Of a DNA stretch of 64,000 nucleotides, positions 4,431 through 64,000 are shown piece after piece. This stretch comes from Epithemia pelagica (lineage: Eukaryota; Protista; Bacillariophyta), in assembly GCA_946965045.2 (NCBI GenBank), contig OX337236.1, positions 1,612,001 through 1,676,000 of the forward strand, given 5' to 3'. Made by a program: the position numbers and the translations under genes. How positions within the stretch are numbered: the stretch's first letter is position 1; each line of letters starts with the position of its first letter. The notes under the pieces are model-generated. The model was not told where the DNA came from. It saw only the letters and a program-made list of their open reading frames with translations, and ran no database searches.

Positions 4431-4438
4431 TCCCAGCC

Positions 4439-6613: not shown

Positions 6614-6654
6614 AAATTTGCTTCCAACGACAAAAAATTTGCTTCCAACGACAA
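6614..6654. repeat. Two-copy tandem repeat, 21-bp period
   Basis: AAATTTGCTTCCAACGACAA occurs at 6614 and 6635. Confidence 0.85.
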
Positions 6655-13571: not shown

Positions 13572-13709
13572 ATTGGTTGATACATCGGAAGTGTAAAAGT
13601 AGGGCCTTGACGAGGCTGCAACCGAAACAACTTCATTACTTCCTCCCAACCAGTGGAGCATGGAGTGCGTTACTTCGAACTCTTTACAGAGCTGTACGAC
13701 CGGGAATTG

Positions 13710-14597: not shown

Positions 14598-14717
14598 GTT
14601 TTGTAGGAGTAATGTTTGGTCAAACTAGAGGCAACCTGACGGTTTAGCGCATGAGTCACGCCATAATTCCTGAGTCACGACCATGTTGCCCTTTTTCAAT
14701 TTTAAGCAGCGGAATAG

Positions 14718-14878
14718 TCACTTATTCGCGTCGTGGCAAAAAGCAAGTTCCTTATTCAACAAAAGACTAAGCTTAACACTACGTTTTCCCTTTTAGTGAG
14801 GGTGTAAGGAATAATGACTGTTGGGCCTCATTTTTCCCCCATGACTCGTCAATCACGTGTCAATCCCGGATGACCACC
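14718..14878 (-). repeat. 3' LTR of copia element
   Basis: Matches 21047-21207 at 159 of 161 positions. Confidence 0.92.
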
Positions 14879-14947
14879 GTCCCCGCAAGTCCAAGAATCC
14901 ACAGTCCAAAGATGAACGGACTTGACATGACAACCAAACGATGTACG

Positions 14948-39200: not shown

Positions 39201-40251
39201 CATGCGGACGTATGATCGGTGACTTGCTGGATGCATTCTATCGGTTGTCGTCGTCTTCTTCTCAAGGTCACTTCCTCTGTTTCGGATGCCAAATAAGAAA
39301 GACTTCAAAACCTTGCCGTCGGTCCATAAAAAAAGCCAACTCATCCCTGCCCGCCCATTCCCTCACGGTACACTTGATTCTTAGGCATCCTTGATGGTCG
39401 CAAGAGAGCTGGCACCTTTCGTTGGAGGTGCACACCGGCTTGAGTGTGTCATGGTGGTGTTACGCAGTGCAAAATGACCGTGGTGGTGTCCCTACGAAGT
39501 AAGAATCACTGTAGAAAAAACAGTGGGGGTATGAAAAGCACGGGCCACTACGGTTACCCATATCGATTGATGGAGCTCGTACACGTAGTCTAGAGGGCAA
39601 TATTATCGAATTGGGCCTTTTTCTGGTTATTACTGTACTCGTACTTGTAGTCTTACGCAGGGTTGTGAAGTCATAAGTCACTAATTCCAAAGTCAACACC
39701 GAATTTGACTTGATTTTGCCACTTTTTTGCAAGTCCCATTCCATTCGTCATGCCGTAGAATACGGAATGACAATTCCTTATTCAATTCTATACTCTATAC
39801 CACCAGTACTTATTCTGTTCAAGTCAAGTCTCCTTCGTTATTTACATGACTTTCATTCCCCAAGTCAATCTCATTCACTATGACCGGACGACTTGTCATT
39901 CCAAAGTCTTCTTCTATTAGGCCCAAAGTTCCCTACTTGAAGTCATTATAGTAAGTCATTTACCAAAACTCCCTAAGTCAGTTATTCCATTCTCCTAAAT
40001 TACAGACACACCGATAATCACCGTGTATTCTTCATACAAAGCGCCTCGAAACTGACAAAACAAACAACAATCAACTGATGACCTACACATACCTTCTTCC
40101 CCAACACCTATCAGAATGACCCTTGACTCTTGGCCTTGTTTCGTCGTGTCCTCACTTCTCACTCCTCACAGTTAGAACGACAAGCAGCCAGCATCCTTTC
40201 ACCACCGTCCCCCCTTTGTCACTTTGCACCCTGCACCTCTTGCGCCCAACC

Positions 40252-43200
40252 ATGGCTCCAAAGAGGAAGTCGTTGAGCCGAACATCGAGCAAGAAAAGCT
40301 CGACTGATGATCCACCATTGGATGCTGCAACGGTGAACAAGATCAAGGCTCGCCAATCTCTATACATACAGGAGAAGGAGCTCATTCCCATTCTTTCCTC
40401 CCCACTTCCCAAATTTTTCACTCAGAATCCTACTCCTCTATGGAAATGGGGGATCCACATCGATTGGGAAAAGTTCGACAAGTTTCACGAAGAATCCATT
40501 GACGAGAAACGAGACTTCTCAATGTACGAGGGAGTCACCAGCTTATTCGAATCCTACGAACATGTTGTAATCAAGAAATTATGGCCGAAGAAAAAACCTT
40601 CTCAACAAGGCAGGAAGAAACCGGTTGTATCGAAGAAGCTAGCCAAGTACCAAGATGTCTGTTGGTTCTGCATCATATGCCCTGTTTGCTTCCACGATCC
40701 GGATACAACATTGGCCAAATCCATCATCGGTTGCTCTGGCAAAACTTCCAATATCTCCCAGCACCGAACTGGGAGTCACCAAGATTTGACGTTTGACGAC
40801 GAGAAACCGGACACACAGGCTACTCTTGGCCAATATGCAACGAATCAAATGGTAACACGATCAGGTATTCGCAAGGAATTCCGACGACTCATATATGAGT
40901 TCGTGAATGATTGCTGCCTACCAGCATCGACAGTAGAGAAGCCAGAATTTCGGTCACTACTTCAGTTCGCAACCTCCCATGGCCTCCAGCTCAAAGATTC
41001 CAAGGCTGAAAATATGAGTCGAAGGGAGATCACCAAAATGCGCTTGAATTCTTATGAAGAGTTTGTCTTCGTCGTGTCAGAACTTGGCAATAACGTTCGC
41101 AATGCTTATCACAAGCTATGCAAGCAGAACGTACCTTTTGGGACCTTATGCCACGACATATGGAACGGCCCCAGGGGCGACATTCTGGGTGTCACTATAA
41201 TGTTCACAGATCCCAGAAACTGTGAAGTTTATAGAATTCCCATTGGCCTGGCTGAAATACAAGGTCACTCGGCTGCCGATGTCGCCAAGTTGACACACGC
41301 TCTACTAAATCAAGTCGGATTTTCTCAGAGTGACTTATACGCCTCTGTAAACGACAACACGGCATCAGCCGTGCTTGCAGGCAAGTACATTCTCGGCATT
41401 CCACGTCATGGGAGTGGTAGTGGCAGTAAAGGCAAGTGTGACATGCACAAGGCCGAACTGATTCTGAAACATGCCACCGGCTTGGTACAACGAAGCAGAA
41501 ACAAGATTATCATCGACGCCAATCCAGAATTTGTTGAAGCCTATGGTATTGCAAAGAAGTTTGCTGCATGGCTCATGAGCAGTCGAGCACCACAACGATG
41601 GGAGAATTTCAAAGATTTCGCGAACAAAATGGGAGCTGTGATCATCATGATTCCACTCCCCAATGAAACAAGGGTATCTGGATGCATCCTACTCATCATT
41701 GGCCTCCTTCGCAGCAAATGGATTATGGATGAATACGCTGCAAGTACTATAAATGGAGACCTAGGCTTCAAACGCCGCTATCCCAATCCGGATGTATGGG
41801 AAGTTCTTTCCCAATTTGAAGCCATTCTATCCCCTCTAAAGGCAGTGTCTCTATCGCTCCAAGTCGATGCTCCTGGTTCTTCATCTGCGTCCTTATTGGA
41901 GTTGTACAGTGCCCGTCATGTTGCCGAGTTGATGGAAATTGAGGACATCGAATGCTTGCCCATGAAAGAAAATTTGGACAACCCAATCAAGAAGTGGGAT
42001 GCCACAAAGAACATGGATGACCTGGACGAACAACGCAACCCAATTGCCTTTGAGGACTTGCATTCGACTAGTCGGAAACTCATCCGTCGGGTTATCAAAG
42101 AGTACAAGACGTACGTTCTCGAAGAAAAAGACGAAGATGCAGAGAAAGCCATGTGCTGCAACCCACTCCTGGCCAATATTTTTGAAGGACTCTTCAAAGA
42201 TTTGGATGCCTATGACGACGACAATATCTCCCGTGTTAAGACGATGTTTGTGGAGGATATGGTTGCCAAGTTTTCGAACAAACGAGTTTCGCGCCTTGGT
42301 ACAGTGTTTGCAAAACAGACTGGCAACAGTGGGGGAACAACAGACTCCACACCTACTACGAACTCGAGTGCAAAACCTAAGAAAAAATCGAAGGTGGCAA
42401 GTGCCTTTGCCAAGATCAGAGAAGCACGAGAGAAAAAACAACAGGACTTGCTTGGACTGTCTGGCAAGGCCAGTAACGCTGGCGCAGAGGCAAAACTTGT
42501 TGCGGACCTCCGCGAGGCATGCAAACAATGTTGGACCGATTTCAAGAAAATGTGTGACCTCATGATTGATCACAGATGGGAGGTGGTGATCAAGAAGTAT
42601 TCGACAGATGAATTCAAGGAGGAATCTCAGAAATGGGGGCGTTTGGAATGGGACGAGTTCAATGAACACTGCCGTGACAACTACTACCTTGGCATAGCAC
42701 GATATTTCGACGTCATGAAATGGTGGAAGGTTCATGGTTCAGAATATCCTTTCATGCTCCCTTCAGCTCTCATTTGGCTTACCAAACCTCCTACTAATGC
42801 CTTTCAAGAACGAGTGTTCTCTGCAAGCACTTGGTATCACCAGAACAAACTGATGGGCAATATGTATGAGAAACACAACGAGATGCGAACTTTGGAAAAG
42901 TTGACTAGGCCGTTGCGCAAATTGATTCTTCAGAGAGAAGCCGAAATAGAGAAAGAAGAAACAGAGAAAAAGGAAGTGATCGACATGACTGCGATAGACG
43001 AGAGTGGCACAAAGGGAGACGGCACAAGCAGCCAAGTCAAAGCCACTGCAAGTGTTGCAGTTGCAGTAGCCAGTCAACCAGTGGCTTCTGAAAGCACTAC
43101 CGAAACACCGTTGCGACAAAGAACAAGTAGTGGAACAGGAAGTGGAACAGGAAGTGGAACATCAAGTGAACCGATCAATATAACAGCGGCAAGTACACCA

Positions 43201-43788
43201 GCACAAGACATTAGCACTGGGGCCACAGACCAGCTATCCAGCACGGAACAAGATGGGAAATTGCCGTTTCAAGAGAAGAATAAGACGACACCAGTGGACC
43301 TGGACCAACATGGGCGGCAGATGCAAGGTCGACAGTTACAAATGGCAATGGCCATTCAGAAGGCCGCTATGGAACTACAAGAGTTCGGTAAGAAGAAGGT
43401 TATGGATGAAGGAACAAGCCAATACAATGACAGGCAAGATTCGGTCTCAGTGGCGGAGAGGACGACAACAACAAGATCTGTTCCGGTCGATCCAGAAGTA
43501 GCCGGCAACAGCACGACAGCCGAAGAAACAACAAAATTGATGAAGTTCTACGCTGATACAGACAATGATGATGATCTTGCTCCTCCTCTAGAAGCAGACG
43601 ACATTGTGGTCGTTCAAATTCCTATCGACGAGCAAGACAAAGACCAGGATGAGGGAGACGATGGAGATGACGGTGATTGTGGATTGTTGAAAGCCTTGAA
43701 GGAACAAATGGAAGAAGTAAAGGTAGAATCTACCGGCATTGCGATCAGCCCTACGGCTGTTGGTCTGTTGAAGGACGACGCCAACTAA
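40252..43788 (+). CDS. hAT transposase (BED-like finger, DDE core, dimerisation domain, long acidic tail)
   Basis: C/C/H/H finger near the N-terminus, 'CHDIW', 'NDNTA', 'CDMH' and 'KWWK...YP...PPTNAFQERVFS'. The frame stays open for 70 more codons after TAA 43786-43788, ending at 43998. Confidence 0.9.
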   Translation: MAPKRKSLSRTSSKKSSTDDPPLDAATVNKIKARQSLYIQEKELIPILSSPLPKFFTQNPTPLWKWGIHIDWEKFDKFHEESIDEKRDFSMYEGVTSLFESYEHVVIKKLWPKKKPSQQGRKKPVVSKKLAKYQDVCWFCIICPVCFHDPDTTLAKSIIGCSGKTSNISQHRTGSHQDLTFDDEKPDTQATLGQYATNQMVTRSGIRKEFRRLIYEFVNDCCLPASTVEKPEFRSLLQFATSHGLQLKDSKAENMSRREITKMRLNSYEEFVFVVSELGNNVRNAYHKLCKQNVPFGTLCHDIWNGPRGDILGVTIMFTDPRNCEVYRIPIGLAEIQGHSAADVAKLTHALLNQVGFSQSDLYASVNDNTASAVLAGKYILGIPRHGSGSGSKGKCDMHKAELILKHATGLVQRSRNKIIIDANPEFVEAYGIAKKFAAWLMSSRAPQRWENFKDFANKMGAVIIMIPLPNETRVSGCILLIIGLLRSKWIMDEYAASTINGDLGFKRRYPNPDVWEVLSQFEAILSPLKAVSLSLQVDAPGSSSASLLELYSARHVAELMEIEDIECLPMKENLDNPIKKWDATKNMDDLDEQRNPIAFEDLHSTSRKLIRRVIKEYKTYVLEEKDEDAEKAMCCNPLLANIFEGLFKDLDAYDDDNISRVKTMFVEDMVAKFSNKRVSRLGTVFAKQTGNSGGTTDSTPTTNSSAKPKKKSKVASAFAKIREAREKKQQDLLGLSGKASNAGAEAKLVADLREACKQCWTDFKKMCDLMIDHRWEVVIKKYSTDEFKEESQKWGRLEWDEFNEHCRDNYYLGIARYFDVMKWWKVHGSEYPFMLPSALIWLTKPPTNAFQERVFSASTWYHQNKLMGNMYEKHNEMRTLEKLTRPLRKLILQREAEIEKEETEKKEVIDMTAIDESGTKGDGTSSQVKATASVAVAVASQPVASESTTETPLRQRTSSGTGSGTGSGTSSEPINITAASTPAQDISTGATDQLSSTEQDGKLPFQEKNKTTPVDLDQHGRQMQGRQLQMAMAIQKAAMELQEFGKKKVMDEGTSQYNDRQDSVSVAERTTTTRSVPVDPEVAGNSTTAEETTKLMKFYADTDNDDDLAPPLEADDIVVVQIPIDEQDKDQDEGDDGDDGDCGLLKALKEQMEEVKVESTGIAISPTAVGLLKDDAN

Positions 43789-44075
43789 CCCATAGAGGGA
43801 ACTTCCAAGGATGCTCCCGTTATCACGACTCCTCTGGCTGTTGCCACTGATTTCTCAACTCCTGAAGCAAGTGAAAAACAAAATGCAAGCACGAGCAAGA
43901 AACAAGATGGGAAAAGGAAGGATACGAGTAGCAAGAAAACCCATAGTCCATCGAGCAAACGTACCCGCTCCAACACCACACTTAAATCACCGCCGTGATA
44001 CACTTATTCCATTTATGATTCACTAACAATGAGGCAATGAAGTTGCATGTTTGCATGATTAACCGTTAAGTTTTA

Positions 44076-45843
44076 CTAGGATCTTTGATAAATGGTCGCC
44101 ATCATAGGAATCAGTGTCTTCAAATTATTACCGGAATGTGTGTCGTTATAGGAATCGAGTGCTGATAAAACAGTGGGTTGGGTCTCATTGGATTGGAGGA
44201 GCTGGCCCAAGGAACCAAAGAGGGGATTGATCTGTTTCCATATGTTTCGTGGAATCCATGAGGTGAGAAGGTGCGAACATCTTAGAGAGTCGCTCTCCAT
44301 TTTGTAGCCATGGGTCCATTCCAAATGAAAACACCATCGGAAAACATGAATATCACAGGGTATTCCTTCATCTCGGGAAAACGCCGAAGATAGAACAATC
44401 ATGACAGTTTTGTGGCCAATCCCAATCAGCTGTTCAAATTGGCGAGCGCAAATATTGGACGGAATGGTCCCATCGTGGCGCTGTATGAAATAGTCAGCTG
44501 AGTTGACTATTCTTTCGGCATTGTTGTAGTAGCGACCAGCATCAGAAATTATGGAACAGAATGCATTCATGCCATAACGGGATGCGATGTCATAACAAGC
44601 CGTTGCAGATGTGAGGCCAATGGAGAAAAGGCGTGGGATAATTTTGCTGAGTTGTGCATCTGACGTACTCGAACTCATGATGATGATGATCAGGCACATG
44701 AAAGCTCAGTCTGGTTGTTGGGATATGTCGTCAGAGTTCGATTGGTTGTGGAGATAATCGTCCATCCATCGTTCCCAATTGTCTCGTGGGGAAATGATGT
44801 TCTTATCGAGAAGGTGTTGCCGAAAATCAAGAAGACCGGAAAGAAGATTGAGTTGTTTTTCCTTTATTTGTGGAGCCAATGGTGGAATAGGAGCCAGATA
44901 TACATTTCGGAGGGGTAGTAGTTTCGGTGGTTCACCAGGCATGTGGCGCTTCTCCGTCGAATCATAACCTAGTTTGTTGTATTGAATTTTTATTTTGGAT
45001 CGGGAGGCGGATTGAATCAGTTGTGAAATTAGTCTCGTTCGTTTCCGGGTAGAGTAGGGGTGGAACAAGGATGTATTTGTTGTGGTTTTGCGTGTGGAAG
45101 AGGATGGAGAGGATGAATTATTTGGTTTGGTGGTCGGAGACCCAGCAGGGGAAGTGATTTGATTGTCATGTTCTTGGATTATGGACAGAACTTCCTTTTC
45201 GAACATATCGATGAAAGGGAAAATGGTATCGGGAACAAATCTGAATAGGGGACCTTCCTGGCCAACTGTAATTGGAGTTTGCACAACGAAACGCGTGTCG
45301 GATCGAATCATCCAAGACATTATGTGGGTGAGTGGTGAGATTGAGCAAGTATCTCTTTGGTCCAGGGTATATTCGGCACAGAGTGTGGTAAGGAAGGTCG
45401 AACAGTCTTGTCGGTAGAATGTAGGCAAACAAAATATCTCCATGTATGGATTGGCTCCTTCTGGGACTTCATAGTTGATGGTATATGGCGAACTGTCTGA
45501 AGCTGTGGCTTCGAGAATACCGAGGGAAAATTGTTTTATGACCTCGCTGGAAGGGATGCTGTTGACTTGGCAGATGTGTGTCCTTGACATGAAAGTATTG
45601 ACTTGCTTGATTGTAATTGTCTTGTTCGAACGCATTAGCCATCTTAGAAGTATATCGGAAATAGCATCCACTAAGACGTTGTCTTCGTCAACCATTTCCT
45701 CGGGTTCAGATACAGATGAAGGATGCCCTTCAAGTTCCTCTTCTAGGAATCTGATTAAAAGTATAGGGACAGTGAATTATGTATCGAACTCGACATCGAG
45801 ATTCGAATACAATGTTGTTCTTGTTCGTGCTTACACAAGCCAT
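44076..45843 (-). pseudogene. N-terminally extended endonuclease III (HhH-GPD, NTH1-like), disrupted copy inside hAT-1
   Basis: 'LIGIGHKT', 'PCDIHV' and 'LTSWIP..W.QINPLFGSLGQLL'; colinear with 60339-62180. In-frame TGA at 44706-44708 and a frameshift in the homopolymer run at 45757-45760. Confidence 0.82.
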
Positions 45844-46729
45844 TCTGTACATTGTAAATTTGCACAGGTGCAGAGGTGCAGAGGTGCAGAGTGCAGAAGA
45901 GTTGGCGCAGACACAGTACAGAGTGCAGAGTGCAGAAGCACAGCGATTCCTTAACCATTAGTGCACAGTTGTGTCTTGCATTATGTGACTTAAGTCACTT
46001 TGACTTAAACGGTATAAGTCAGGGAATTAACAGGGAATTATGAAGAATTTAGCATTAAAGTCAAAGTCAAATTCCATCATGCTTGTATTGTTATTAAGTC
46101 GCATGAGGGAGACGGGGGGAATTGACTTGACAAATTAATTCTAAGTAAATTCTATAGCAATGGGTAGTAGACTTAATAGCTTAATAGTCATTAAGTAAAT
46201 TTACTGGAAGTGTTACAGTGACTTGCTAATCACTAAGTAAAGTCGTCCATAAATTTAAATAGTACTTGAAAGTAGCTAAGTCCATTCACTATGTCATATA
46301 TAGTTACTTCACAACCCTGGTCTTACGAGTACTCGTACGATAATCTTTTTCTCATTCAATATCCGTAATCCGTAGGGCGTACGTTGATTGGTAGTTTTGA
46401 GGACTACAATAATCCATGAGGATGAGGAGGATTTTGCAAAATATCCGTAGTTACCATGGCTAACTTGCTACGGACATCGTCAACATGAACGTGATGTTCT
46501 ACGTGTTCGTACTCCTCTTGGTAAGTATACCGCTTGATCAAGTACAAGTGTATCAAGCTAGTAACCCATCCGCATCCGCACCCTCTTGCAACAGAGAGTC
46601 TACAAAATACTGGAAAAGAGCAGAATGAGAATGAACATGGAAAATGTGGCTTACATAATATACACAAATACGCATTAGAAGACCAGACGACAGACCCCCA
46701 TAGGTCTCCCTCGTGAATTAGCGGACAAT

Positions 46730-54014: not shown

Positions 54015-54731
54015 ATGTCGACGCAAGAACAAGACCCCCAACCTACTGGAACCGAAGACGCCAACACGAATTCTGGCGAACCAAAGAAGCAGAAGGGTCG
54101 GAAGAGGGGATCCGCGAGGTGGGGCCAAGAGGAGACCGATCTCATGCTGACGATCGTTGAAGAACTCTGTCCTGCGGGCGACGACATGTGGAAGGAGGCT
54201 GCAGGAGAACTCTACGAAGCTTCCAACGGCAAGTATCGCCGGGACGGTAACGCTGTGAAGCGCAAGTTTGAGAAGATGTGCATGGGAAAGAAGCCAACGG
54301 GTGCAACAACCCCGCCTAATACCGTGGTACGAGCCAAGCACATCAAGGATCATATTGCTTTGAAAGAGGGTGTTGGGCACTCAGGGCAGAATGACTCTGA
54401 TGATGATGAAAATAGCCAAGAGGGCAACAAAGAGGAGAAAGGAGTGCAGATTCTCAAGCGTTCGGAGTTGGGCCGTCCCTTGACCAAGAAGCGCAAATCG
54501 ACGTTGCTGAACGAAGCACTCGATCGTCTTGGTGAGCAGCAGAAGGAGTCTACAAAGATCCTTGCTAATGCCTTGGTCAAGGGACTGGCCACTGTAGGTG
54601 CAGCCCCTGCTGCAGCGACTTCTACAATGGATCGCATTGATGTGGTGGAAGACAAGCTGCAGCGTATGGACGAGAAAATGGACAGCAAGCTGGCTGTCAT
54701 TCTCAAAGCGATCCAGCAGAACGAGAAGTAA
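54015..54731 (+). CDS. Myb/SANT-like DNA-binding partner protein of Harbinger
   Basis: 'WGQEETDLMLTIVEELCPAGDDMWKEAA...RDGNAVKRKFEKM'; coiled-coil C-terminus. Confidence 0.82.
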   Translation: MSTQEQDPQPTGTEDANTNSGEPKKQKGRKRGSARWGQEETDLMLTIVEELCPAGDDMWKEAAGELYEASNGKYRRDGNAVKRKFEKMCMGKKPTGATTPPNTVVRAKHIKDHIALKEGVGHSGQNDSDDDENSQEGNKEEKGVQILKRSELGRPLTKKRKSTLLNEALDRLGEQQKESTKILANALVKGLATVGAAPAAATSTMDRIDVVEDKLQRMDEKMDSKLAVILKAIQQNEK

Positions 54732-54782: not shown

Positions 54783-56066
54783 CTAGTCATTTATTTCATC
54801 GTCATCATCATCATCAGAATATTCTTCGTCGTCATTCCAGTCGTGATCGTTTGCTTGTCCTTCTTCTTGTGCTGCTGTAGATTGTTGCTGTTGTTCTTCT
54901 TGATAGTTTTCCCTCACGTAGTTAAAATACGTGCGAATCTGATTGCGATCCATGGTCTCTGTTCTGAAATTCAGCAGAAGGACAGAGCACCAAAGGATCA
55001 ATTCGCGACGCATTTGACACGTTGGGAGTTTACTTACAACACGACGAAAAACTTTCGTCAGACAACCGTTGCCCCACTCACTCGCCTGACGGAGGTGCGT
55101 CAGCAATCGTTCGTATTCCGACTTGTCCATCGTGTTTTCGTTGCCCTCCTTCAGTTTGACAAGCTTACCACTCATGTCTCCACTTGTCTTGAATGCCGAA
55201 TCGCAAACAGCCAGATATGGGTCCGGCAACTTCTTGATATGGTCGTAAATGTTCCCCCAGTAACATGACTTGCTGTCATGAAAGTTACCAGGGGCGTTTA
55301 CGACACAATCAATCACTTTTCCCGAAGGTGACCAAACAAAAATGCAGTTGCGATTCGTATCACCCGTCCATCCATTGTAATCTCGGTTTTGCTTCTTGGG
55401 ATCAGGGTCGTTGAGGGTGACCAGCTTTAAACCATCCATCATCGCAATGACGTAGCGGATGGCTTCGAAGGCTGCAGTCAGACTCGCTTGCTCCTGTAGA
55501 TTGTCTTCCGACATGTCCCAAAATACACGAGCTTTCTCGTTGTTCACTAGGGCCTTGAGGATGCTTCCAAGGCCAAGATAGACGCAGTTTTTGAATTGGG
55601 TGGCGAGTGCACCAAACTGGCAGTGTAGGTTCTTGACTTCACTGCGACATGTCAACCACTTCACCGCCATCACCAAAATATCGTAAGCGTCAAATCGTCG
55701 GCGTTGAATGTCTTGCTCCTGCGGTACACCCTGTCGCGGATCAATACTTGAGGATATGATTGATTGCTGTGTCAACTCAACCAATTCGTTGATCGCCTCC
55801 CTTGAGAAGGCGGTGAAGTGGAGGAATTCAAGGTCATCTCCATGGTGACGGACGCGGTACCAAAAAGAGTCCTTGCTTTGTCCAACGACACGTCGTCGAT
55901 AACGACCTTGTACCGCTCGGACAACCGTATCTGTCTGTTGGGAAGCAGCAACAGCAGCAACAGCAGAAACTGAAGATGCTAAGCTGTCATGGTGATGGAT
56001 GACAGCTGTAGCGATAGCAAGCAACGCCTTCTTCTTACGTTCAGCGAAAGATTCGGAAGTCGACAT
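54783..56066 (-). CDS. Harbinger DDE_Tnp_4 transposase
   Basis: 'MMDGLK', 'YNGW', 'NAPGNFHDS', 'VCDSAF' and 'RQASEWG'; uninterrupted 427-aa ORF. Confidence 0.9.
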   Translation of the reverse strand: MSTSESFAERKKKALLAIATAVIHHHDSLASSVSAVAAVAASQQTDTVVRAVQGRYRRRVVGQSKDSFWYRVRHHGDDLEFLHFTAFSREAINELVELTQQSIISSSIDPRQGVPQEQDIQRRRFDAYDILVMAVKWLTCRSEVKNLHCQFGALATQFKNCVYLGLGSILKALVNNEKARVFWDMSEDNLQEQASLTAAFEAIRYVIAMMDGLKLVTLNDPDPKKQNRDYNGWTGDTNRNCIFVWSPSGKVIDCVVNAPGNFHDSKSCYWGNIYDHIKKLPDPYLAVCDSAFKTSGDMSGKLVKLKEGNENTMDKSEYERLLTHLRQASEWGNGCLTKVFRRVVSKLPTCQMRRELILWCSVLLLNFRTETMDRNQIRTYFNYVRENYQEEQQQQSTAAQEEGQANDHDWNDDEEYSDDDDDDEIND

Positions 56067-57609: not shown

Positions 57610-59301
57610 CTAATATTCTAGTGATACACCGGGTCTCGGTTGTTTCTCAGCACTTTTGCGAATAGATCGCCGACTTCACGGAAAGTCACACACATCATGA
57701 TCGTGAGTGTTTCTTGTTCCAAAGGTTTATGGGGACTACCAGAGAACGGATGATACGACAACTTACTTTCGATTCTTGATGTGAAACGGATGATGACGAC
57801 CAGTGGCGTCACATTTTCGACAGGTTTGCGTGGTGTGGAACATGACTCCTTTCTCATTCACACTAAACTGCAATCGAAACCCATGAGCCTTACCCCAACA
57901 TTTCTCTAGAGCCAGGAATTCATCTTCCGTGAGAATTTCAACAACTGAGTAGTTTTCACAGTCTAACAATTCATTTCGGTCCAGCATGGGAGAGGATGGT
58001 TCCACCGCAGCCGCGGCAACTGCTGGTCGAGGAAGATCCTCCATTTCTCGAAACAATGCTAGTTGTCGGTTGAGTTCAGCTGGGCTTCCGATGCCGGCAG
58101 CTCTCATAGCTTCCACAGTCTCAGGATCTGGACCTTGACCAGGAATCATGCCGGGGACAACAGATTCCGCGAGAGGTCGACCAGGAGACTCTGGGATGGT
58201 TGCCGCAACTGGTGAGCAAAGCAAGCTTTCACCATGAGGAACGAGAAGTTCCGGAGATTCACCGTACAAGTAGGTCTCCAGGTGCGGTGGCAACAAGGCC
58301 AGACGATGTGCGTCGCACAACAAGCACGCCGAGTCTGGAGGGGGAACATTTCCTCCTTCACCAGTCTTGATATAACGGCGCCATGCGTAGCACCACGAAC
58401 GAGGCAGGACATAGTAGTTACCATGAATCAAGGGACACTGTCCAGGCACTGTGGCGGTGAGAATGGAATGGGCAGGGACCCCCGTACGACGTTTGTAGAA
58501 CTGCCGAATGTCTTCGTTGGCCAGAGGACGCCTTCGTTCCAACTTTTCTTTTTCCAGCCGGTCACTCTCGTTTCTCTTTGCAGTCTCAATTTCGAGAGTG
58601 CACTGAAGACATTCACCCACGGCAGATTCAAGCTGTGTCGAATCTGGGTACAACTTCTTAAGAATCTTCCATGCCTGACGATCCAAAACACGGCGGCGGG
58701 CTCGCGCAGACTTGACACTGGTGCAACGTTGGAGGTTCTGGTGTTCGCAGAGTAGATCTATGTTCGCGTTTGGCCAAGGTGGGTTGGCATCGGAGAGCTT
58801 GCGGTCGCGGAGTCTTTTCTTCTTTTTCGATAGCTTTTGAGGACGGCAAGACTGTTCTTGTTGGACTTCCAGCCATCGAAGAGCCGCTTTGCACCATGAT
58901 TTGGAAACAATGAATCCGGTGGCAGGTTCGGGGCTACTCAATGCACGCGCAACGACCAGAAGCTCCATATTTCGAAGATGCTCGAATGTATACAACGGCT
59001 TTTTGATATTCGAACCGAGCTTTCGTCCAACAGATTTTCCTCCTTTGGGCGGCGCGGATGGTGATGATTCAAAGCCCAGAGTGTATTCGGAGGGATAAAT
59101 CTCTTCCGCAAAATGCGAAACCACTGTATCAATCAATTCAGGCTGAGCATAAAACTTGCAAGTCATCTGAACAGCCGATAGATCGTATGCTCGAAGATAT
59201 GTCAAAATGTTGACTTGAGTATCAATTGGCAAATTCAAAAGGCATGCATTGGCTTCTTGACTTCGATTTGTTGATTTAGATGATGGAGGGTTTGACGTCA
59301 T
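57610..59301 (-). CDS. F-box-like domain plus USP48-like DUSP repeats protein
   Basis: 'LLNLPIDTQVNILTYL..YDLSAVQMTCK', 'IVSKSW...W...NIDLLCEH' and 'YVLPRSWCYAWRRYI...LLCDAH'. The 3' end assumes an intron at 57674-57766; otherwise the stop is at 57763. Confidence 0.6.
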
Positions 59302-60338
59302 TGTGTAAATTGAGCTGAGTTGAGTGGATTTTGTTTGAAATATGGGTACAATAGGATGTATGCGAATGGAGAAAACAAAAGGTACACGTTTGGGAGAAAG
59401 CAAAATTCAAAAATGTTCGGTAGCAGAGAGGGGAAGTTGGCCGAAAGAGAATATACAAGAACAAAGGACGAATGAAGTAGTCTCAAAAACAAAACGTTTG
59501 TTTTTGATGAGAAATGGAATCTATGATATGTACAAAGGGTGGGAAAGCTTGCTTGAATCGATGTATGAGAAGATTCGTTCGAACAGGGAAGGCTTTGTTG
59601 CGATGAGATGATGGCGAGATGCGCTTCCGACCAGGGTGTGGAAGTTGGAAAATCAGCCATTAGACTTAACTTCCCAACTAATAATTCATTAGACAGTTTA
59701 CTGTGATGCGACTTGTACCCACTAGTTAATGCAACATGTATGATTAACTTAACTTAAACTAATCAAATCACAAAACCACGATACAGAATGAACTTGCAAC
59801 TAATAGTCTAACACGACTAAGGTACTAACTTGACTAGATTAAATATGGTTCCAATGAAGAACCTGCAACTTAACTTAGACTAACTTTGAAAGTCGTAGTT
59901 TCTTTTCTGAGTCTGCAACTAGACTAAACAAGTCCAAGTTGCAACTTTGCCCCTTGTAATTAAACTTCATCCCTCTGTCACCTCCATAGTTACAACTATT
60001 AGTTGCAACTTCTTTGTTGTCGTAGTCACAAACAACAACTTTTATTCAGAGGAACCATTCACTCTTATCTGTTTCTACGTATTTATTCACACTCTTCCTG
60101 CACATATTTACCAATATCACTCCCAGAGGAGTAGAACGTTCACGACTCACGACAGAGGTTCAACCAACACTCACAACTCTCAACCTCTCACAACATTCAC
60201 CAATCCACTGTCACCTGTCACCTTTACCTCTGTTCCTTTCCATCAACGACACAACCTTCAGTTTTCCTTCCCTTCTCATTTCTCATTGCCACTATTATTT
60301 CCCCATCCTCAACCCCATGCATCTTATATTCAAGTACA

Positions 60339-62180
60339 ATGGAAGCATCAGATGACCGTACCATCAACCTCGATGTGACTTGTCACCAAGTCATCACTGT
60401 GACCCATATTCCAATGTCGTTCATGACCATGATGCTAGAGGACTCAACTTTGCTAACCACTCCCTTGGAAAAGGCGACACAAGACTTGGCAATGGAGAAC
60501 ATAAAAGATGTGGTGTTGCTGTGGCTTACCCGGTACAATGGAAGTCTGCACTACCAACAAGTCGACTATCCATCCAACACAAGCCACCCTTGTTTATCTC
60601 CCAGTCGCATGTCATTCGAAAGCTTACTGAACACTGTCTGTCGAATAGTGTTTACGGGTCTGTATTCCCAAGAAGATGACTCATTCCAAGTCACATACGA
60701 GATGAACCCCCCCACCGACGACCTCCCCTTCATCTCCATTGAAGGAAAATGCCGACCAATATTTTCTTTGCCTTCCTCCAATGGTCTCAGAGCTTTTCAA
60801 AAATTCAATGCCGATTACCATCAGCAAAACAACTACACTAAACTTTCCGTGGAATGGAATCTTCTAACCTGGATGACCCGACACAATGCCAGAATCCAGG
60901 TTAGAAATTCCTTTGACCTACGGACAGAGTGTCCTATTTGTATTAGTCCAAGCATCGACATCGTTGTTGAGGACATTGTTGCGCATACTAAGAAGAGCAC
61001 GAAGGAGGATGACCGTTACTCAATGAAACTGGATACAACAACGTCCCCTCCTCCTATTGATACAAGTCCTCCATCAACTCCAGTTGCCAAAGCTTCTCAA
61101 TCTACCATGGGCCCAAATAGCAACAACGCTTCTACTTCTGTCAACCATGAATATTGGGCTTCTTCTCCTGTCATTGATGAATATTGGACCAAGCGACAAT
61201 TTTCCCCCACTGCCCATGTCTTGACTCGGCAAAGAAAAACTGTTCTCTGCCATGCTTTATTGCAATCATGTTCCGCCAAGGAACAGATAGTCTATGGCGA
61301 CAGACACATGCCTGGGACACCTGCAATTACCAAACCTGTCATGACCAGAATGTTTCGCCCTTCCATCCCCATTAGAAACCAATCCACAATTGATTCCCGG
61401 CTGTTTTTACTTGATAATCTTTCCCATTTACGTCGGTATTTCCTTCAGTCTGGTTTGGAAGCCCCCAGAGACACATGGTCCGAATGGATTACCAACAATA
61501 TGTCGGAATATGAAGACTCTGACCCAGCCTTCATGTGTCTCATTGTTATCTTGATGAGCTCGGCCACATCAGATCAAAGTCTCTCTCAAGTGATCCCTCG
61601 CTTATTCCAATCGGGCATCACTAGTGCACAAGGAACAATTGAAGTGTCTACATATTTTGGGATGGATGTTTTCTGTACTTTGTTTGCAGAAACAGGACGG
61701 TATCGTGTCAATGCGGAACGCATAGTCAACGCCGCTGACTATTTCGTCCAGCGACACAAAGGTCGCATTCCTAAAGACATTTCCCTTACTGAGCTTATGA
61801 CCTTACCTGGAATTGGCCACAAGACGGGAACAATCATTCTACAAACGGCATTTGGCCGGACGGAAGGAATTCCCTCAGATATTCATGTTATCCGATCAAC
61901 TAAGGTTCTCAATTGGACGGAGTCTCATATCAATGACGGCATGGAATGCTCTTTGAACCTTCAATCATGGCTTCCTAAAGAACGATGGGAGGAAATCAAT
62001 CCTTTATTTGGTTCTCTAGGACAACTACTTAACAAATCACAGACCAGAAGCAAGTGCCAAGAACAAATGGAGTCTTTTATTGTGGCTCACTCTCATGACA
62101 AATCCGAATCTAAATCTCCAGCGAATCTCCGCCATCTCAAGTATTTCTTTCTGCAGTTGATAAAAGAATATACTAAATGA
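60339..62180 (+). CDS. N-terminally extended endonuclease III-like DNA glycosylase/AP-lyase (HhH-GPD), intact, lacking the 4Fe-4S motif
   Basis: 'ILMSSATSD', HhH 'LPGIGHKT' (catalytic Lys), 'GIPSDIHV' (catalytic Asp) and NTH1-like 'LQSWLPKERWEEINPLFGSLGQ'; 613-aa uninterrupted ORF. Confidence 0.88.
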   Translation: MEASDDRTINLDVTCHQVITVTHIPMSFMTMMLEDSTLLTTPLEKATQDLAMENIKDVVLLWLTRYNGSLHYQQVDYPSNTSHPCLSPSRMSFESLLNTVCRIVFTGLYSQEDDSFQVTYEMNPPTDDLPFISIEGKCRPIFSLPSSNGLRAFQKFNADYHQQNNYTKLSVEWNLLTWMTRHNARIQVRNSFDLRTECPICISPSIDIVVEDIVAHTKKSTKEDDRYSMKLDTTTSPPPIDTSPPSTPVAKASQSTMGPNSNNASTSVNHEYWASSPVIDEYWTKRQFSPTAHVLTRQRKTVLCHALLQSCSAKEQIVYGDRHMPGTPAITKPVMTRMFRPSIPIRNQSTIDSRLFLLDNLSHLRRYFLQSGLEAPRDTWSEWITNNMSEYEDSDPAFMCLIVILMSSATSDQSLSQVIPRLFQSGITSAQGTIEVSTYFGMDVFCTLFAETGRYRVNAERIVNAADYFVQRHKGRIPKDISLTELMTLPGIGHKTGTIILQTAFGRTEGIPSDIHVIRSTKVLNWTESHINDGMECSLNLQSWLPKERWEEINPLFGSLGQLLNKSQTRSKCQEQMESFIVAHSHDKSESKSPANLRHLKYFFLQLIKEYTK

Positions 62181-62282
62181 CTGTCAATATATTATATTTA
62201 CCAAAATGCACTGCGATTATGGATGTATAGTTTCCGTGACGTTTCTTCCATTGTCACCTTCAGTGACATTCGTGGTTGGAGA

Positions 62283-64000
62283 TCAACTGGTACCGTCATT
62301 GTCCGCACTTGAGAATTCCTTCTCTGCAAGTCTTGGGCTTCTTCTCGTTGGCGAGTCGTTTGGGGTTGGGGGTGGTTTGCGATTGTCTTTCTTGCGTGGT
62401 GTTCTAACCACAGTTCTTGCGAGTGCCTCAGAGAGTGAATTCTGCTTCGTCCGTTTCCTTCCTTTTTGAATAGTTGAAGAGGCTTTACGTTTCCCACTAT
62501 CTCCTTTCTTGCCTTCATTGACATTTGCAACGGGCAGACTAGCAACAGTCTTCTCCAACGCGGTTTGTTGAATGAGTTCATTCTTTCTTTCCTGGATGGC
62601 TTCTTTTAACGCCGTGTCAGAATCTTCCTTGTCTTCGTCATCGTCGTAAGGAGCAACAACTTTTCGATCCAAAGCCTCTAGTTGATCTTCATCTCGTGGA
62701 TCGTCTACCAGATCAACCAATTCGACGTCGTCCCATGTCGCATCGCTCACAACTGTCTTCTTATCAACCTTTTTGACCGACTTGAACTTGTAACTTGTCT
62801 CCGCCTCTATGCCGTGGGCACCAATAGTTCCGGACAGTTCGTAGAGTTCCAGCTTCGACGTTGCTCGTAGTACCGTTTCCATCCGAGTCATATCGGATTG
62901 TGTCGGTGTGGCTTTTTCCAGTGGGACAACAGGAACTTGTGTTCCTGCTGCCGGGGTGCGTTGTTGTGCGGTCTGTTGTACCTGACTGACTTCTTCCCCT
63001 TTAGATTCCTGGCTGAGATCTATCACCTTCTTTGCTTGGCGGCCACTGGCTGCCTTTTTTTCGTCGGAGGTCGCGCCTTCTTTGAGTAGCTTTTCATTCT
63101 TGACAATCTCAGAGCGCACCTCCCTTGTAATACTCTCCATAGTGCGCATTTCGAAGTTCTTGTCTAGTTGGCGTCTCATTAAGGGATTCCTATCCATGAA
63201 CGACGACCGAGAGAACACGCGTTCCTGGAACGCGTTTGTCGCAGGTTTCGATATCCAAATCAAGGCACTAGGAAAGAGTTTGGGGAATAGCATCTTGTTG
63301 TCGGACCACCATTTCAAGACGTCAAAATATTTCCCAACGACATGGAAATAGTGTTCCGTACAGGCCAACTTGAATTCTTGTTGTTTTTCAGGGTTCCACG
63401 AACCAGATAGTTTCAGAAATGCGGCAGTGGGATACTGGCGAATCAAGTCCTCCCAGGATCCATGGACAACGTTCTCGCAAAATTCGAGATAGCGTCCAAA
63501 CTGTTCATCACACATCTTGTATAGCTTGGCTCTATCAACTTGGTCATCTGTACTGGTACTTGTCGCCGTCGCCTCCATTAGTGCAGCATTTTCTTTCTCC
63601 TTGGTGATGCGATGTGTCTTGAAGATGTTAAAGCAGTCCATTACATTCGTGACAGCTTTTGGGACTGAAGGCTCTTCCTCTTCGTCCTCGATGATCTCCA
63701 CAGGTGTACTTTCCTTTTGTTGTTCACGTTCCTGCTGCTGATTCGACTTGGATTGGGGATTGGTGCCATTCTTCTTTGGCTGCGAGAACTTGCGGACAAT
63801 GTCCATCACAAATTCTTTCCGAATCCGTTTAAGACTCTCATCGTCGTAAACATTTATGGTTTTCAGTATGTTGGGACCATAAGATGCAAGGAAAGGATGT
63901 CCACACATGGCGTGTTCAGCGTGGGAGTCATGGCCTTCCTCAATGTAGTTTGTATATTCCACAAGTACTCGCTCGATCAACAATTGACTCTTTTCTGACA
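62283..64000 (-). CDS. hAT transposase, C-terminal part (5' end beyond window)
   Basis: 'YFDVLKWW...FPKLFPSALIWISKPATNAFQERVFS' is clearly homologous to the hAT-1 transposase. Confidence 0.88.
   Translation of the reverse strand, partial: SEKSQLLIERVLVEYTNYIEEGHDSHAEHAMCGHPFLASYGPNILKTINVYDDESLKRIRKEFVMDIVRKFSQPKKNGTNPQSKSNQQQEREQQKESTPVEIIEDEEEEPSVPKAVTNVMDCFNIFKTHRITKEKENAALMEATATSTSTDDQVDRAKLYKMCDEQFGRYLEFCENVVHGSWEDLIRQYPTAAFLKLSGSWNPEKQQEFKLACTEHYFHVVGKYFDVLKWWSDNKMLFPKLFPSALIWISKPATNAFQERVFSRSSFMDRNPLMRRQLDKNFEMRTMESITREVRSEIVKNEKLLKEGATSDEKKAASGRQAKKVIDLSQESKGEEVSQVQQTAQQRTPAAGTQVPVVPLEKATPTQSDMTRMETVLRATSKLELYELSGTIGAHGIEAETSYKFKSVKKVDKKTVVSDATWDDVELVDLVDDPRDEDQLEALDRKVVAPYDDDEDKEDSDTALKEAIQERKNELIQQTALEKTVASLPVANVNEGKKGDSGKRKASSTIQKGRKRTKQNSLSEALARTVVRTPRKKDNRKPPPTPNDSPTRRSPRLAEKEFSSADNDGTS

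What the first reader, a model, noticed from the sequence alone, without database searches (positions are those of the whole stretch)
39658..46319. hAT transposon that carries its own endonuclease III-like DNA glycosylase/AP-lyase
Seen: a complete hAT element bounded by 14-bp TIRs and a perfect 8-bp TSD. It contains the transposase (+) and, tail-to-tail, a HhH-GPD gene (-) with the NTH-type HhH Lys and the downstream Asp. Established: autonomous hAT elements normally encode only a transposase. HhH-GPD enzymes include NTH1, the G:T glycosylases MBD4/MIG and the 5mC glycosylases DEMETER/ROS1. Transposon-borne anti-silencing genes are known elsewhere (VANC in VANDAL, TET/JBP beside KDZ elements in fungi). 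Inference: this may be an undescribed two-gene hAT lineage whose base-excision enzyme counters host methylation or deamination, or processes transposition intermediates.
Basis: partly seen in the sequence, partly recalled or inferred. Interest (0 to 1): 0.93.

Follow-up and report, generated by a model that had tools for sequence, protein, structure and literature searches.

The report
hAT transposon family with own DNA glycosylase
A recently mobile family of cut-and-paste (hAT) transposons, probably in a diatom, has carried and kept under selection a second gene for an endonuclease III-like DNA base-excision enzyme. No such pairing turned up in the literature searched, and it gives a testable case of a transposon that may edit DNA bases for its own benefit.

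Summary
Window 39658-46319 is a hAT element with perfect 14-bp TIRs and a perfect 8-bp TSD. It holds an intact transposase and, tail-to-tail, an NTH1-like HhH-GPD gene. In this copy the glycosylase is broken by one TGA at 44706-44708.

This is not an incidental capture.
- Ten insertions in the same assembly, one of them nested in another, have both genes inside TIRs, and nine have exact 8-bp TSDs.
- Two independent metagenome or read-assembly contigs show the same convergent pair.
- Glycosylase and transposase trees agree: 6 of 8 splits are shared, and 0 of 20,000 permutations reach that.
- Synonymous sites are saturated while the HhH domain stays conserved.
- The catalytic Lys and Asp are invariant across the 12 aligned members.
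- All 27 transposon glycosylases form one clade against 86 cellular Nth-like proteins.
- Two copies are 99.96% identical at different sites, and DNA reads contain the exact empty site of copy 2.

The protein has no Fe-S cluster motif and has a roughly 220-aa N-terminal domain with no detectable fold relative. One related high-copy lineage in another assembly has no glycosylase.

Substrate and role are untested. Anti-silencing base excision is the leading inference. First-stage notes flagged the same element type 7 more times elsewhere in this genome.

The parts
39650..39657 (.). Left target-site duplication GTCTTACG of copy 1
   Evidence: Identical to 46320-46327.
39658..39671 (+). Left terminal inverted repeat CAGGGTTGTGAAGT of copy 1
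   Evidence: Exact reverse complement of 46306-46319. The same TIR type bounds the outer element in L004.
40252..43788 (+). hAT transposase of copy 1, 1178 aa from the ATG (open frame from 40123), intact
   Evidence: Pfam PF05699 at 27.5 bits. It carries CPVCF..H....H, CHDIW, VNDNT and QERVFS motifs at columns that are invariant in the 9-sequence alignment A3. The C-terminal block aligns to Hermes transposase.
44076..45695 (-). Glycosylase gene of copy 1: N-terminal region plus NTH1-like HhH-GPD domain, inactivated by one nonsense codon
   Evidence: Translation. The HhH part is 49% identical to the intact copy 2. Pfam HhH-GPD scores 24.7 bits.
44706..44708 (-). In-frame TGA stop that breaks the copy 1 glycosylase
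   Evidence: Relatives carry CGA, CGG, CGT, AGA, CCA or AAA at this codon.
44409..44411 (-). Codon of the HhH catalytic Lys (GIGHKT) in copy 1
   Evidence: The column is invariant in alignment A1.
44352..44354 (-). Codon of the catalytic Asp (IPCDIHV) in copy 1
   Evidence: The column is invariant in alignment A1.
46306..46319 (-). Right terminal inverted repeat of copy 1
46320..46327 (.). Right target-site duplication GTCTTACG of copy 1
59624..59631 (.). Left TSD CTTCCGAC of copy 2
   Evidence: Repeated after the right TIR at L006 16211-16218. Contigs from DNA reads join this TSD directly to the right flank, which is an empty-site allele.
59632..59645 (+). Left TIR CAGGGTGTGGAAGT of copy 2. 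The element runs to the equivalent of window position 66548, beyond the window end.
   Evidence: Read contigs break exactly at 59631/59632.
60339..62180 (+). Intact 613-aa glycosylase of copy 2. It has an N-terminal domain of unknown fold (1-222), a disordered linker (about 220-293) and an NTH1-like HhH-GPD domain (about 376-613). Lys495 is at 61821-61823 and Asp514 at 61878-61880.
62283..64000 (-). C-terminal 566 aa of the copy 2 hAT transposase (full length 1220 aa, seen in L006)

Best explanation
SHOWN. Window 39658-46319 is one member of a multi-copy, recently mobile hAT family whose ancestral structure has two convergent genes inside the TIRs.
- The first is a long hAT transposase of about 1180-1290 aa, with a BED-like CCHH motif, a DDE triad and the hAT dimerisation domain.
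- The second is a protein of about 540-620 aa. Its C-terminal third is an endonuclease III/NTH1-type HhH-GPD domain that keeps the nucleophilic Lys and the catalytic Asp. It has no 4Fe-4S cysteine motif. It is fused to a family-specific N-terminal domain with no recognisable fold relative.

The glycosylase domains form a single clade, consistent with one acquisition from a eukaryotic NTH1-like gene. The gene has co-diverged with the transposase until synonymous sites saturated, while staying under purifying selection. Copy 1 is a recent casualty: its transposase is intact and its glycosylase is broken by one TGA.

INFERRED. The protein is an active bifunctional glycosylase/AP lyase that serves the element rather than the host. 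The role I think most likely, at about 35-40%, is base excision on the element's own DNA that opposes cytosine-methylation-based silencing. It would remove 5mC or one of its oxidised or deaminated derivatives. The novel N-terminal domain would supply targeting. This would be analogous in logic to the TET/JBP genes of fungal transposons and to VANC of VANDAL elements.

The stated confidence is for the whole package: a selected, element-serving base-excision gene. The structural part alone I put at about 0.95.
For: Architecture
- TIR plus exact 8-bp TSD enclose both genes in W1, W2/L006, L001, L002, L004-inner, L004-outer (a nested insertion), L007, L008 and L010. L003 has a 7-base shifted TSD.
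- The same convergent pair occurs in a Logan contig (L013) and inside TIRs in a sediment-metagenome contig (L014).

Mobility
- L007 and L008 are 99.96% identical over 6.8 kb but have different TSDs.
- DNA-read contigs break exactly at 59631/59632, and one carries the exact empty site of copy 2.
- The 90% protein cluster of copy 2 has 17 members on many large contigs.

Selection
- Pairwise pS is 0.67-0.94, which is saturated. pN is 0.16-0.41 in the HhH domain, 0.36-0.58 in the N-terminal part and 0.25-0.50 in the transposase.
- K495, T496, D514 and H516 are invariant in 12 sequences. The G-x-G-x-K-T motif is present in 25 of the 26 family members over 430 aa that were checked.

Co-descent
- The 7-pair trees have identical topology.
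- With 11 pairs, 6 of 8 splits are shared, and 0 of 20,000 label permutations reach 6.

Origin
- The family profile hits human NTHL1 at E = 1.6e-19, ahead of bacterial EndoIII. Foldseek gives NTHL1/EndoIII as top hits.
- 27 transposon glycosylases are one clade against 86 nearest Nth-like proteins, with SH-aLRT 99.
- In the exhaustive search, 41 representatives score below E = 1e-30. Scores then fall gradually through short fragments to about 100 bits for generic Nth-like proteins.

Consistency with methylation pressure
- Elements have CpG o/e of 0.69-0.76 against 0.83-1.03 in their flanks.
Against: - No expression evidence exists. The only runs that hold the sequence are DNA.
- No biochemical or methylome data are available, and the substrate cannot be read from the sequence.
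- The protein lacks the Fe-S cluster. No similarity to any 5mC-glycosylase-specific region was found, and the only solved-structure matches are to the shared HhH-GPD core. Canonical Nth substrates are oxidised pyrimidines.
- One related lineage in another assembly (L015) has the same TIR type and an exact TSD. Its transposase 90% cluster has 205 members. It has no trace of the glycosylase and sits among cargo-bearing lineages in the transposase tree. The gene is therefore not indispensable for proliferation, unless it is supplied in trans.
- CpG depletion of the elements shows they are not protected from CpG decay.
- The subterminal AAGTC-like repeats seen by eye contain no CpG, so methylation-sensitive transposase binding is not implied.
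Confidence: 0.6

Rival explanations
1. Transposition helper. The glycosylase/AP lyase works on transposition intermediates rather than on epigenetic marks. It might process or help repair the hairpinned donor ends or the 8-nt gaps flanking new insertions, or nick DNA to favour excision or integration.
For: The pairing with the transposase is strict and ancient, and the two genes co-diverge. The Lys and Asp of a lyase-competent enzyme are conserved. The convergent, closely spaced layout (38-287 bp from stop to stop, from coordinates) suggests co-regulation.
Against: By established knowledge, Hermes, Ac and other hAT elements transpose with the transposase alone plus host repair, and no step needs base excision. 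A sister lineage without the gene reached a 205-member transposase cluster. Copy 1 lost the gene by a nonsense mutation while keeping an intact transposase.
Confidence: 0.13
2. Anti-mutation guard. The enzyme removes deaminated or oxidised bases such as T:G, U:G, 5hmU or thymine glycol. This would slow the mutational decay of methylated element copies rather than reverse silencing.
For: The domain descends from NTH1, whose substrates are damaged pyrimidines. The HhH-GPD superfamily includes T:G enzymes, and 1kea/MIG appears among the fold hits. The elements appear to be under CpG-decay pressure.
Against: The elements are still clearly CpG-depleted relative to their flanks, at 0.69-0.76 against 0.83-1.03. 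The nonsense codon in copy 1 is compatible with a CGA-to-TGA CpG transition. The known T:G enzymes MIG and MBD4 lack the Lys nucleophile that is conserved here (my own knowledge). A diffusible repair enzyme would benefit the whole genome, so transposon-level selection for it is hard to explain without targeting.
Confidence: 0.15
3. Incidental capture or passenger. A host NTH1-like gene fragment was picked up once and is merely carried along, or the gene is a host gene that happens to lie beside hAT insertions.
For: One copy is a pseudogene and one related lineage lacks the gene. There are 3 synonymous and 3 non-synonymous differences between the window copy and the near-identical read contigs, which is a very small sample.
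Against: The gene lies inside the TIRs in every resolved insertion, at unrelated genomic sites. pN is far below the saturated pS over deep divergence, and the catalytic residues are invariant. Co-phylogeny with the transposase is significant. The clade is monophyletic with its own conserved N-terminal domain.
Confidence: 0.03

Closest known systems
Autonomous hAT transposons (Ac, Hermes, Tol2 type)
   Same: 8-bp TSD. Short TIRs starting with CAG (CAGGG). A transposase with a BED-like CCHH motif, a D-D-E pattern and the C-terminal hAT dimerisation domain, which aligns to Hermes around the E of the (S/Q)ER.FS motif.
   Different: Classical hAT elements encode only the transposase. Here a second, convergent, selected gene lies inside the TIRs. 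The transposase is also unusually long, at about 1180-1290 aa, with an acidic low-complexity tail of about 300 aa.
Endonuclease III / NTH1 (E. coli Nth, human NTHL1, yeast Ntg1/Ntg2)
   Same: HhH-GPD fold, with profile E = 1.6e-19 to NTHL1. The HhH Lys nucleophile and the catalytic Asp are in the expected motifs. The post-Asp WLP..W..IN...G.GQ block is shared with NTHL1.
   Different: No 4Fe-4S cysteine motif in any family member. By my own knowledge, yeast Ntg1 is a precedent for a cluster-less Nth. In the aligned MSSxT(S/T)D block, the position that is Gln in NTHL1 (SSQTKD in the alignment) is Ala, Asn or Ser. By my own knowledge that Gln has a DNA-intercalating role. There is an extra N-terminal extension of about 390 aa. 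The gene sits in a transposon and not at a host locus.
TET/JBP dioxygenase genes carried by fungal DNA transposons (KDZ, hAT7, IS3EU, Harbinger, EnSpm, Helitron; PMC12730594)
   Same: A DNA-base-modifying enzyme encoded as a second gene inside complete DNA transposons, including a hAT lineage. The presumed purpose is to counter cytosine methylation.
   Different: The enzyme class differs: oxidative dioxygenase there, base-excision glycosylase/lyase here. The host group differs: rust and mushroom fungi there, a probable diatom here. In fungi the gene moves frequently between transposon superfamilies, whereas here it shows single-clade co-descent with one hAT lineage.
VANC anti-silencing protein of Arabidopsis VANDAL (Mutator) elements (PMC5735166)
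   Same: A transposon-encoded accessory protein that acts for the element against host silencing. This is the proposed logic for the hAT glycosylase.
   Different: VANC is not an enzyme of base excision. Its demethylating effect is sequence-specific and indirect. There is no homology to the protein described here.
DEMETER/ROS1 5-methylcytosine DNA glycosylases of plants
   Same: Bifunctional HhH-GPD enzymes with the Lys and Asp pair. They provide the precedent that an Nth-like fold can excise 5mC.
   Different: By my own knowledge, DME/ROS1 have an Fe-S cluster and large family-specific flanking domains. Neither was found here. Family membership is not supported, and only the possible mode of action is comparable.

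Membership tests
hAT superfamily of DNA transposons | 8-bp target-site duplication | tested here: met
   Exact 8-bp TSDs in W1, W2, L001, L002, L004-inner, L004-outer, L007, L008, L010 and L015. An exact empty site for W2 is present in DNA reads.
hAT superfamily of DNA transposons | Short TIRs with a 5'-CAG / YARNG-type terminus | tested here: met
   14-bp TIRs CAGGGTTGTGAAGT or CAGGGTGTGGAAGT, and variants, in all loci.
hAT superfamily of DNA transposons | Transposase with the hAT C-terminal dimerisation domain (PF05699) | tested here: met
   9 of 9 transposases are above the Pfam cut-off. The profile aligns to Hermes at this block with E = 3e-5.
hAT superfamily of DNA transposons | DDE catalytic triad in an RNase H-like core with an inserted domain | tested here: inconclusive
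   The invariant motifs CHDIW, VNDNT and QERVFS fit the hAT D, D and E blocks by inspection. Only the E block is aligned to a solved hAT transposase. No structure of the core was predicted.
hAT superfamily of DNA transposons | N-terminal BED-type zinc finger | tested here: inconclusive
   An invariant C-x2-C ... H-x4-H pattern is present, but there is no Pfam BED hit.
Endonuclease III / NTH1 family (HhH-GPD superfamily) | HhH-GPD fold | tested here: met
   Pfam PF00730 scores 26.3 bits against a 26.2 cut-off for the intact copy. The family profile hits NTHL1 at E = 1.6e-19. Foldseek top hits are NTHL1 and EndoIII, with TM by target of 0.66-0.70.
Endonuclease III / NTH1 family (HhH-GPD superfamily) | Lys nucleophile in the HhH motif and catalytic Asp about 19 residues downstream (bifunctional type) | tested here: met
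   K495 and D514 are invariant in 12 sequences. The Lys motif is present in 25 of the 26 family members over 430 aa that were checked. The strict Asp motif is found in 20 of them, and the remaining variants were not inspected individually.
Endonuclease III / NTH1 family (HhH-GPD superfamily) | C-terminal 4Fe-4S cluster loop (C-x6-C-x2-C-x5-C) | tested here: not met
   No family member has the motif. The alignment ends in a Cys-free helical tail.
Endonuclease III / NTH1 family (HhH-GPD superfamily) | Glycosylase/AP-lyase activity on oxidised pyrimidines | not testable with these tools
   This needs enzyme assays.
DEMETER/ROS1 5mC glycosylases | Family-specific flanking domains and an Fe-S cluster around a discontinuous HhH-GPD domain | tested here: not met
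   There is no Fe-S motif. The N-terminal domain has no fold or sequence match to anything known. The best sequence and fold relatives are NTH1/EndoIII.
Transposon-borne anti-silencing / DNA-demethylation cargo (TET/JBP-positive transposons, VANC) | Accessory gene inside a complete transposon, inherited with it | tested here: met
   The gene lies inside the TIRs in 10 or more insertions. Co-phylogeny is significant at p below 5e-5 by permutation.
Transposon-borne anti-silencing / DNA-demethylation cargo (TET/JBP-positive transposons, VANC) | Demonstrated reduction of methylation or silencing of the element | not testable with these tools
   No methylome or RNA data were reachable. The runs found are DNA only.

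The most novel reading that the evidence does not exclude
A transposon has turned an NTH1-type repair enzyme into its own targeted DNA demethylase. In this reading, a cluster-less, bifunctional glycosylase excises 5-methylcytosine, or an oxidised or deaminated derivative, from the element's DNA, guided by a previously unseen N-terminal domain. That would be an origin of DME/ROS1-like active demethylation independent of plants. It would be encoded by a hAT element in a stramenopile and used as a counter-defence against host silencing.
Probability: 0.3. Interest if true: 0.92.

Novelty: new variant of a known kind. Interest (0 to 1): 0.78.

Why it matters
Cut-and-paste transposons are usually thought of as one-gene elements. 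The few with conserved accessory genes have taught much about the arms race with host silencing. Examples are VANC in VANDAL elements, the Myb-like protein of Harbinger elements, and TET/JBP in fungal elements.

This is a clean, multi-copy and apparently still active hAT family. It has kept a catalytically intact base-excision enzyme for long enough that synonymous sites are saturated. If the enzyme acts on methylated or modified cytosines, three things would follow:
- It would be the first glycosylase-type anti-silencing factor found in a transposon.
- It would be a second, independent route from Nth to a demethylase.
- It would give a handle on DNA-methylation dynamics in diatoms, where active demethylation is poorly understood.

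The family also offers natural controls. These include copies with a broken cargo gene (copy 1), a cargo-less sister lineage, and insertion polymorphisms.

The N-terminal domain is a confidently predicted fold with no detectable relative, which makes it a structural-biology target in its own right.

Tried and rejected
- RNA evidence. Both searches for sequencing runs returned only three runs of the organism. Their contigs reach 509 kb, span intergenic DNA and carry an empty site, so they are DNA. Expression could not be tested.
- Metagenome contig scan with the family alignment. It returned only two unrelated Nth loci at 23% identity, which were no use.
- Fold of the N-terminal domain. Foldseek against PDB and AFDB clusters gave TM below 0.2. 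VIA-align wide gave Z of 5 or less, with partial matches of residues 145-222 to small winged-helix or Myb-like modules, below the tool's noise level of Z 7-8. The ESM Atlas gave TM of 0.36 or less. I make no fold assignment.
- Organism identity. It was not established. The coded run label, an Atlas nearest cluster that is commonest in Bacillariophyta and diatom-associated DUF families in neighbouring genes all point to a diatom, but this is inference.
- Host NTH1 comparison. The host's own NTH1 could not be retrieved. The sister group of the transposon clade consists of unnamed metagenome proteins, so the donor lineage is unresolved.
- Excision footprint at copy 2. I first read the loose end TTCCGACGTGG... 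as a footprint. The assembled right flank shows that the genome naturally reads CTTCCGAC-TTCCGACGTGG, so the allele is a precise empty site and not a footprint.
- dN/dS as a ratio. dS is saturated in nearly all pairs, so only pN against pS is reported.
- CpG o/e as evidence for protection from methylation. The elements are depleted, not protected.
- Literature. Six full-text searches found no description of a hAT, or any other DNA transposon, carrying an HhH-GPD or endonuclease III gene.


Full report
**1. The observation**

The sequence at 39658-46319 is as described. CAGGGTTGTGAAGT at 39658-39671 is matched by its exact reverse complement at 46306-46319. Both ends are flanked by GTCTTACG.

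Between the TIRs lies one long (+) ORF at 40123-43788, with its probable ATG at 40252 (1178 aa). It carries the Pfam hAT dimerisation domain.

Tail-to-tail with it is a (-) gene at 44076-45695. Its C-terminal 209 aa are an HhH-GPD domain with GIGHKT and IPCDIHV.

One thing the title hides: this copy's glycosylase frame is cut by a single TGA at 44706-44708, directly before the HhH domain. Relatives have CGA, CGG, CGT, AGA, CCA or AAA at that codon. A one-base change explains the stop, and one possibility is a CpG transition from CGA. That is inference.

**2. The second copy and its boundary in reads**

The pair at 60339-62180 (+, 613 aa, intact) and 62283-64000 (-) belongs to an element that starts at 59632 with CAGGGTGTGGAAGT. 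Fetching the same contig beyond the window (L006) shows the right TIR and the TSD CTTCCGAC. The element is 6917 bp.

I laid three public runs of the organism on 58001-64000. The results were:
- The runs are DNA, with contigs up to 509 kb.
- Contigs break exactly at 59631/59632.
- Summed contig depth rises from about 120-170 in the flank to about 900-1100 and more inside the element. The tool warns that this is not a copy number, so I read it only as consistent with a repeat.
- The flank contig continues past 59631 with TTCCGACGTGGTGCCGAAAAAAACTCCTGA. That is exactly the sequence that follows the right-hand TSD in the assembly.

The last point is a precise empty-site allele. Copy 2 is therefore an insertion polymorphism with an 8-bp TSD. 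This is independent confirmation, from reads, of how the family's ends are defined.

**3. It is a family, and the second gene is part of it**

A search with the glycosylase found few relatives. Every relative on a long contig of the same assembly is followed tail-to-tail by a hAT transposase of 1220-1293 aa.

Searching for TIRs with matching 8-bp flanks gave complete elements of 6.6-6.9 kb that enclose both genes:
- L001: TSD CTTGTGAT.
- L002: TSD CTCAAAAC.
- L004-inner: TSD AGTAGAAT.
- L007: TSD TTGTTCAC.
- L008: TSD ATTCAGGC.
- L010: TSD CTTGGTGG.
- L003: a 7-base, shifted TSD.

In L004 the inner element sits inside an outer element that has the copy 1 TIR type, its own TSD CTCATGAC, and its own glycosylase and transposase.

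L007 and L008 are 99.96% identical over 6.8 kb at unrelated sites. The 90% protein cluster of the copy 2 glycosylase has 17 members on many large contigs, some of them truncated.

The pair also occurs outside this assembly:
- A Logan contig from another run (L013) has the glycosylase followed by a convergent hAT transposase. That transposase is 28% identical to the copy 1 transposase, with E = 7e-51 and a PF05699 match.
- A sediment-metagenome contig (L014) has both genes between CAGGGTTA(C/T)GAAGT TIRs.

First-stage notes of this scan flagged the same element type seven more times elsewhere in the genome. I treat those as leads only.

**4. Selection and co-descent**

Across seven elements of this genome, synonymous differences are saturated (pS 0.67-0.94). 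Non-synonymous differences are lower:
- 0.16-0.41 in the HhH domain.
- 0.36-0.58 in the N-terminal part.
- 0.25-0.50 in the transposase.

The enzyme domain is therefore at least as constrained as the transposase.

In a 12-sequence alignment, K495, T496, D514 and H516 are invariant (W2 numbering), as are many surrounding positions. The Lys motif is present in 25 of the 26 family members over 430 aa that were checked.

Maximum-likelihood trees of the two proteins have the same topology for 7 pairs. With 11 pairs, including the two foreign contigs, 6 of 8 splits are shared. The two conflicts are weakly supported in both trees. None of 20,000 label permutations reaches 6 shared splits.

The HhH domains of 27 family members form one clade against the 86 closest Nth-like proteins from an exhaustive search of 1.84 billion representatives, with SH-aLRT 99. 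This pattern is what a single acquisition followed by vertical inheritance within the transposon lineage predicts.

Among near-identical copies the differences are few: 3 synonymous and 3 non-synonymous in the glycosylase, and 9 and 8 in the transposase. That is compatible with mild constraint, but the sample is too small to weigh.

**5. What the proteins are**

*Transposase.* All nine aligned transposases pass PF05699. The family profile aligns to Hermes around the ER.FS block. The invariant motifs CP.C...H....H, CHDIW, VNDNT and QERVFS fit the BED finger and the D, D and E blocks of hAT transposases by inspection.

*Glycosylase.* The family profile hits human NTHL1 at E = 1.6e-19, ahead of bacterial endonuclease III. 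The AlphaFold model has mean pLDDT 75, about 88 over the C-terminal domain. Its best structural matches are NTHL1 and EndoIII.

No member has the 4Fe-4S cysteine motif. In the aligned MSSxT(S/T)D block, the position that is Gln in NTHL1 (SSQTKD in the alignment) is a small residue here. By my own knowledge, that Gln has a DNA-intercalating role.

*N-terminal domain.* Residues 1-222 fold confidently when modelled alone (pLDDT 88.6, pTM 0.76). The model is two similar units of beta-hairpin, two helices, a strand and a helix. I found no relative in PDB, AFDB clusters or the ESM Atlas. Residues of about 220-293 are predicted to be disordered.

**6. A cargo-less relative**

The transposase search found 29 clusters. 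One of them has 205 member sequences and comes from a different assembly. It belongs to an element (L015 4950-12014) with TIR CAGGGTTTGGAAGT and an exact TSD AGCACCAC.

This element has a transposase followed by about 3.3 kb without long ORFs. No glycosylase similarity is detectable by tblastn or by a profile search of the six-frame translation.

In the transposase tree this lineage is nested among cargo-bearing lineages. Loss is therefore the simplest reading, although the tree is unrooted and only one locus was inspected. The glycosylase is thus advantageous enough to be kept for a very long time, but it is not indispensable everywhere.

**7. Mechanism**

*Shown:*
- A two-gene hAT family.
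- Recent mobility.
- Long-term purifying selection on a catalytically complete Nth-type domain.
- Co-descent with the transposase.
- Loss of the Fe-S motif.
- A novel N-terminal domain.

*Inferred:* the enzyme is active and benefits the element.

I rank the possible roles as follows.
- (a) Anti-silencing base excision on methylated cytosine or its derivatives, about 35-40%. By established knowledge, transposons in diatoms are the main targets of CG methylation, and the HhH-GPD fold has produced 5mC glycosylases in plants. Fungal transposons, including hAT7, carry TET/JBP genes (PMC12730594). The elements here are CpG-depleted relative to their flanks, at 0.69-0.76 against 0.83-1.03, as expected for methylated targets.
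- (b) Repair of deaminated or oxidised bases to slow decay, about 15%. This is weakened by the same CpG depletion.
- (c) Help with transposition intermediates, about 13%. This is weakened by the cargo-less lineage and by what is known of hAT chemistry.
- (d) A functionless passenger, about 3%. This is contradicted by sections 3 and 4.

**8. Novelty**

Six full-text searches found no report of a DNA transposon carrying an HhH-GPD or endonuclease III gene. The nearest precedents are transposons with TET/JBP genes and VANC.

I class this as a new variant of a known kind: a hAT transposon with a new type of conserved accessory enzyme. It is not categorically new.

**9. Limits**

- No expression, methylation or enzymatic data were available.
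- The organism is not formally identified and is only probably a diatom.
- The donor NTH1 lineage is unresolved.
- The DDE core was not modelled.
- The loss inference rests on one locus.

Noticed in passing
L004:2301-16710 (same assembly, another contig): Nested insertion. A 6.9-kb element with the copy 2 TIR type (9467-16392, TSD AGTAGAAT) sits inside an element with the copy 1 TIR type (TSD CTCATGAC), which has its own glycosylase (2892-4523) and transposase (4576-8568).
   Followed up: yes
L015:4950-12014 (assembly ERZ25042306): A related hAT element with the same TIR type and an exact TSD but no glycosylase. About 3.3 kb of ORF-poor DNA follows the transposase. Its transposase 90% cluster has 205 members, the largest in the family. 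What replaced the cargo is unknown.
   Followed up: partly
window:54015-56066: A divergent gene pair. One gene is a 238-aa DUF6818 protein (54015-54731, +). The other is a 427-aa DDE_Tnp_4 (PIF/Harbinger-type) transposase (54783-56066, -). This looks like a two-gene Harbinger-like element a few kb from copy 2.
   Followed up: no
window:40252-43788 and all family transposases: The transposases are unusually long for hAT, at about 1180-1290 aa. After the dimerisation domain they have an acidic, low-complexity C-terminal tail of about 300 aa that is poorly conserved.
   Followed up: no
proteins P0064, P0067, P0071, P0072, P0105, P0106, P0137: Database proteins of about 150-340 aa that match only the N-terminal part of the glycosylase family profile. 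They may be truncated pseudogene products like the 329-aa N-terminal ORF of copy 1, or free-standing versions of the novel domain.
   Followed up: no
proteins P0206 (1143 aa), P0211 (1806 aa), P0205 (623 aa): The metagenomic sister group of the transposon glycosylase clade includes very long proteins labelled 'endonuclease III'. In P0206 the HhH-GPD domain sits at the far C-terminus, and no other Pfam domain is found. These may be further Nth fusions with unknown N-terminal regions.
   Followed up: partly
window:39658-39780 and 46200-46319: Both subterminal regions of copy 1 contain several AAGTC/GACTT-like short repeats, seen by eye. They are candidate transposase-binding sites and contain no CpG.
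   Followed up: no
window:58087, 58912, 58998, 59385: The host flank differs from the read contigs at a few single bases, and the reads carry the empty site of copy 2. The public runs therefore represent another haplotype or strain than the assembled one.
   Followed up: partly
L003:6963-6976 and L003:174-4607; L002:17231-21782: A lone right-end TIR of the copy 1 type lies upstream of the L003 element. Copia-type (RVT_2) elements lie close to two of the hAT insertions, so these insertions sit in transposon-rich neighbourhoods.
   Followed up: no
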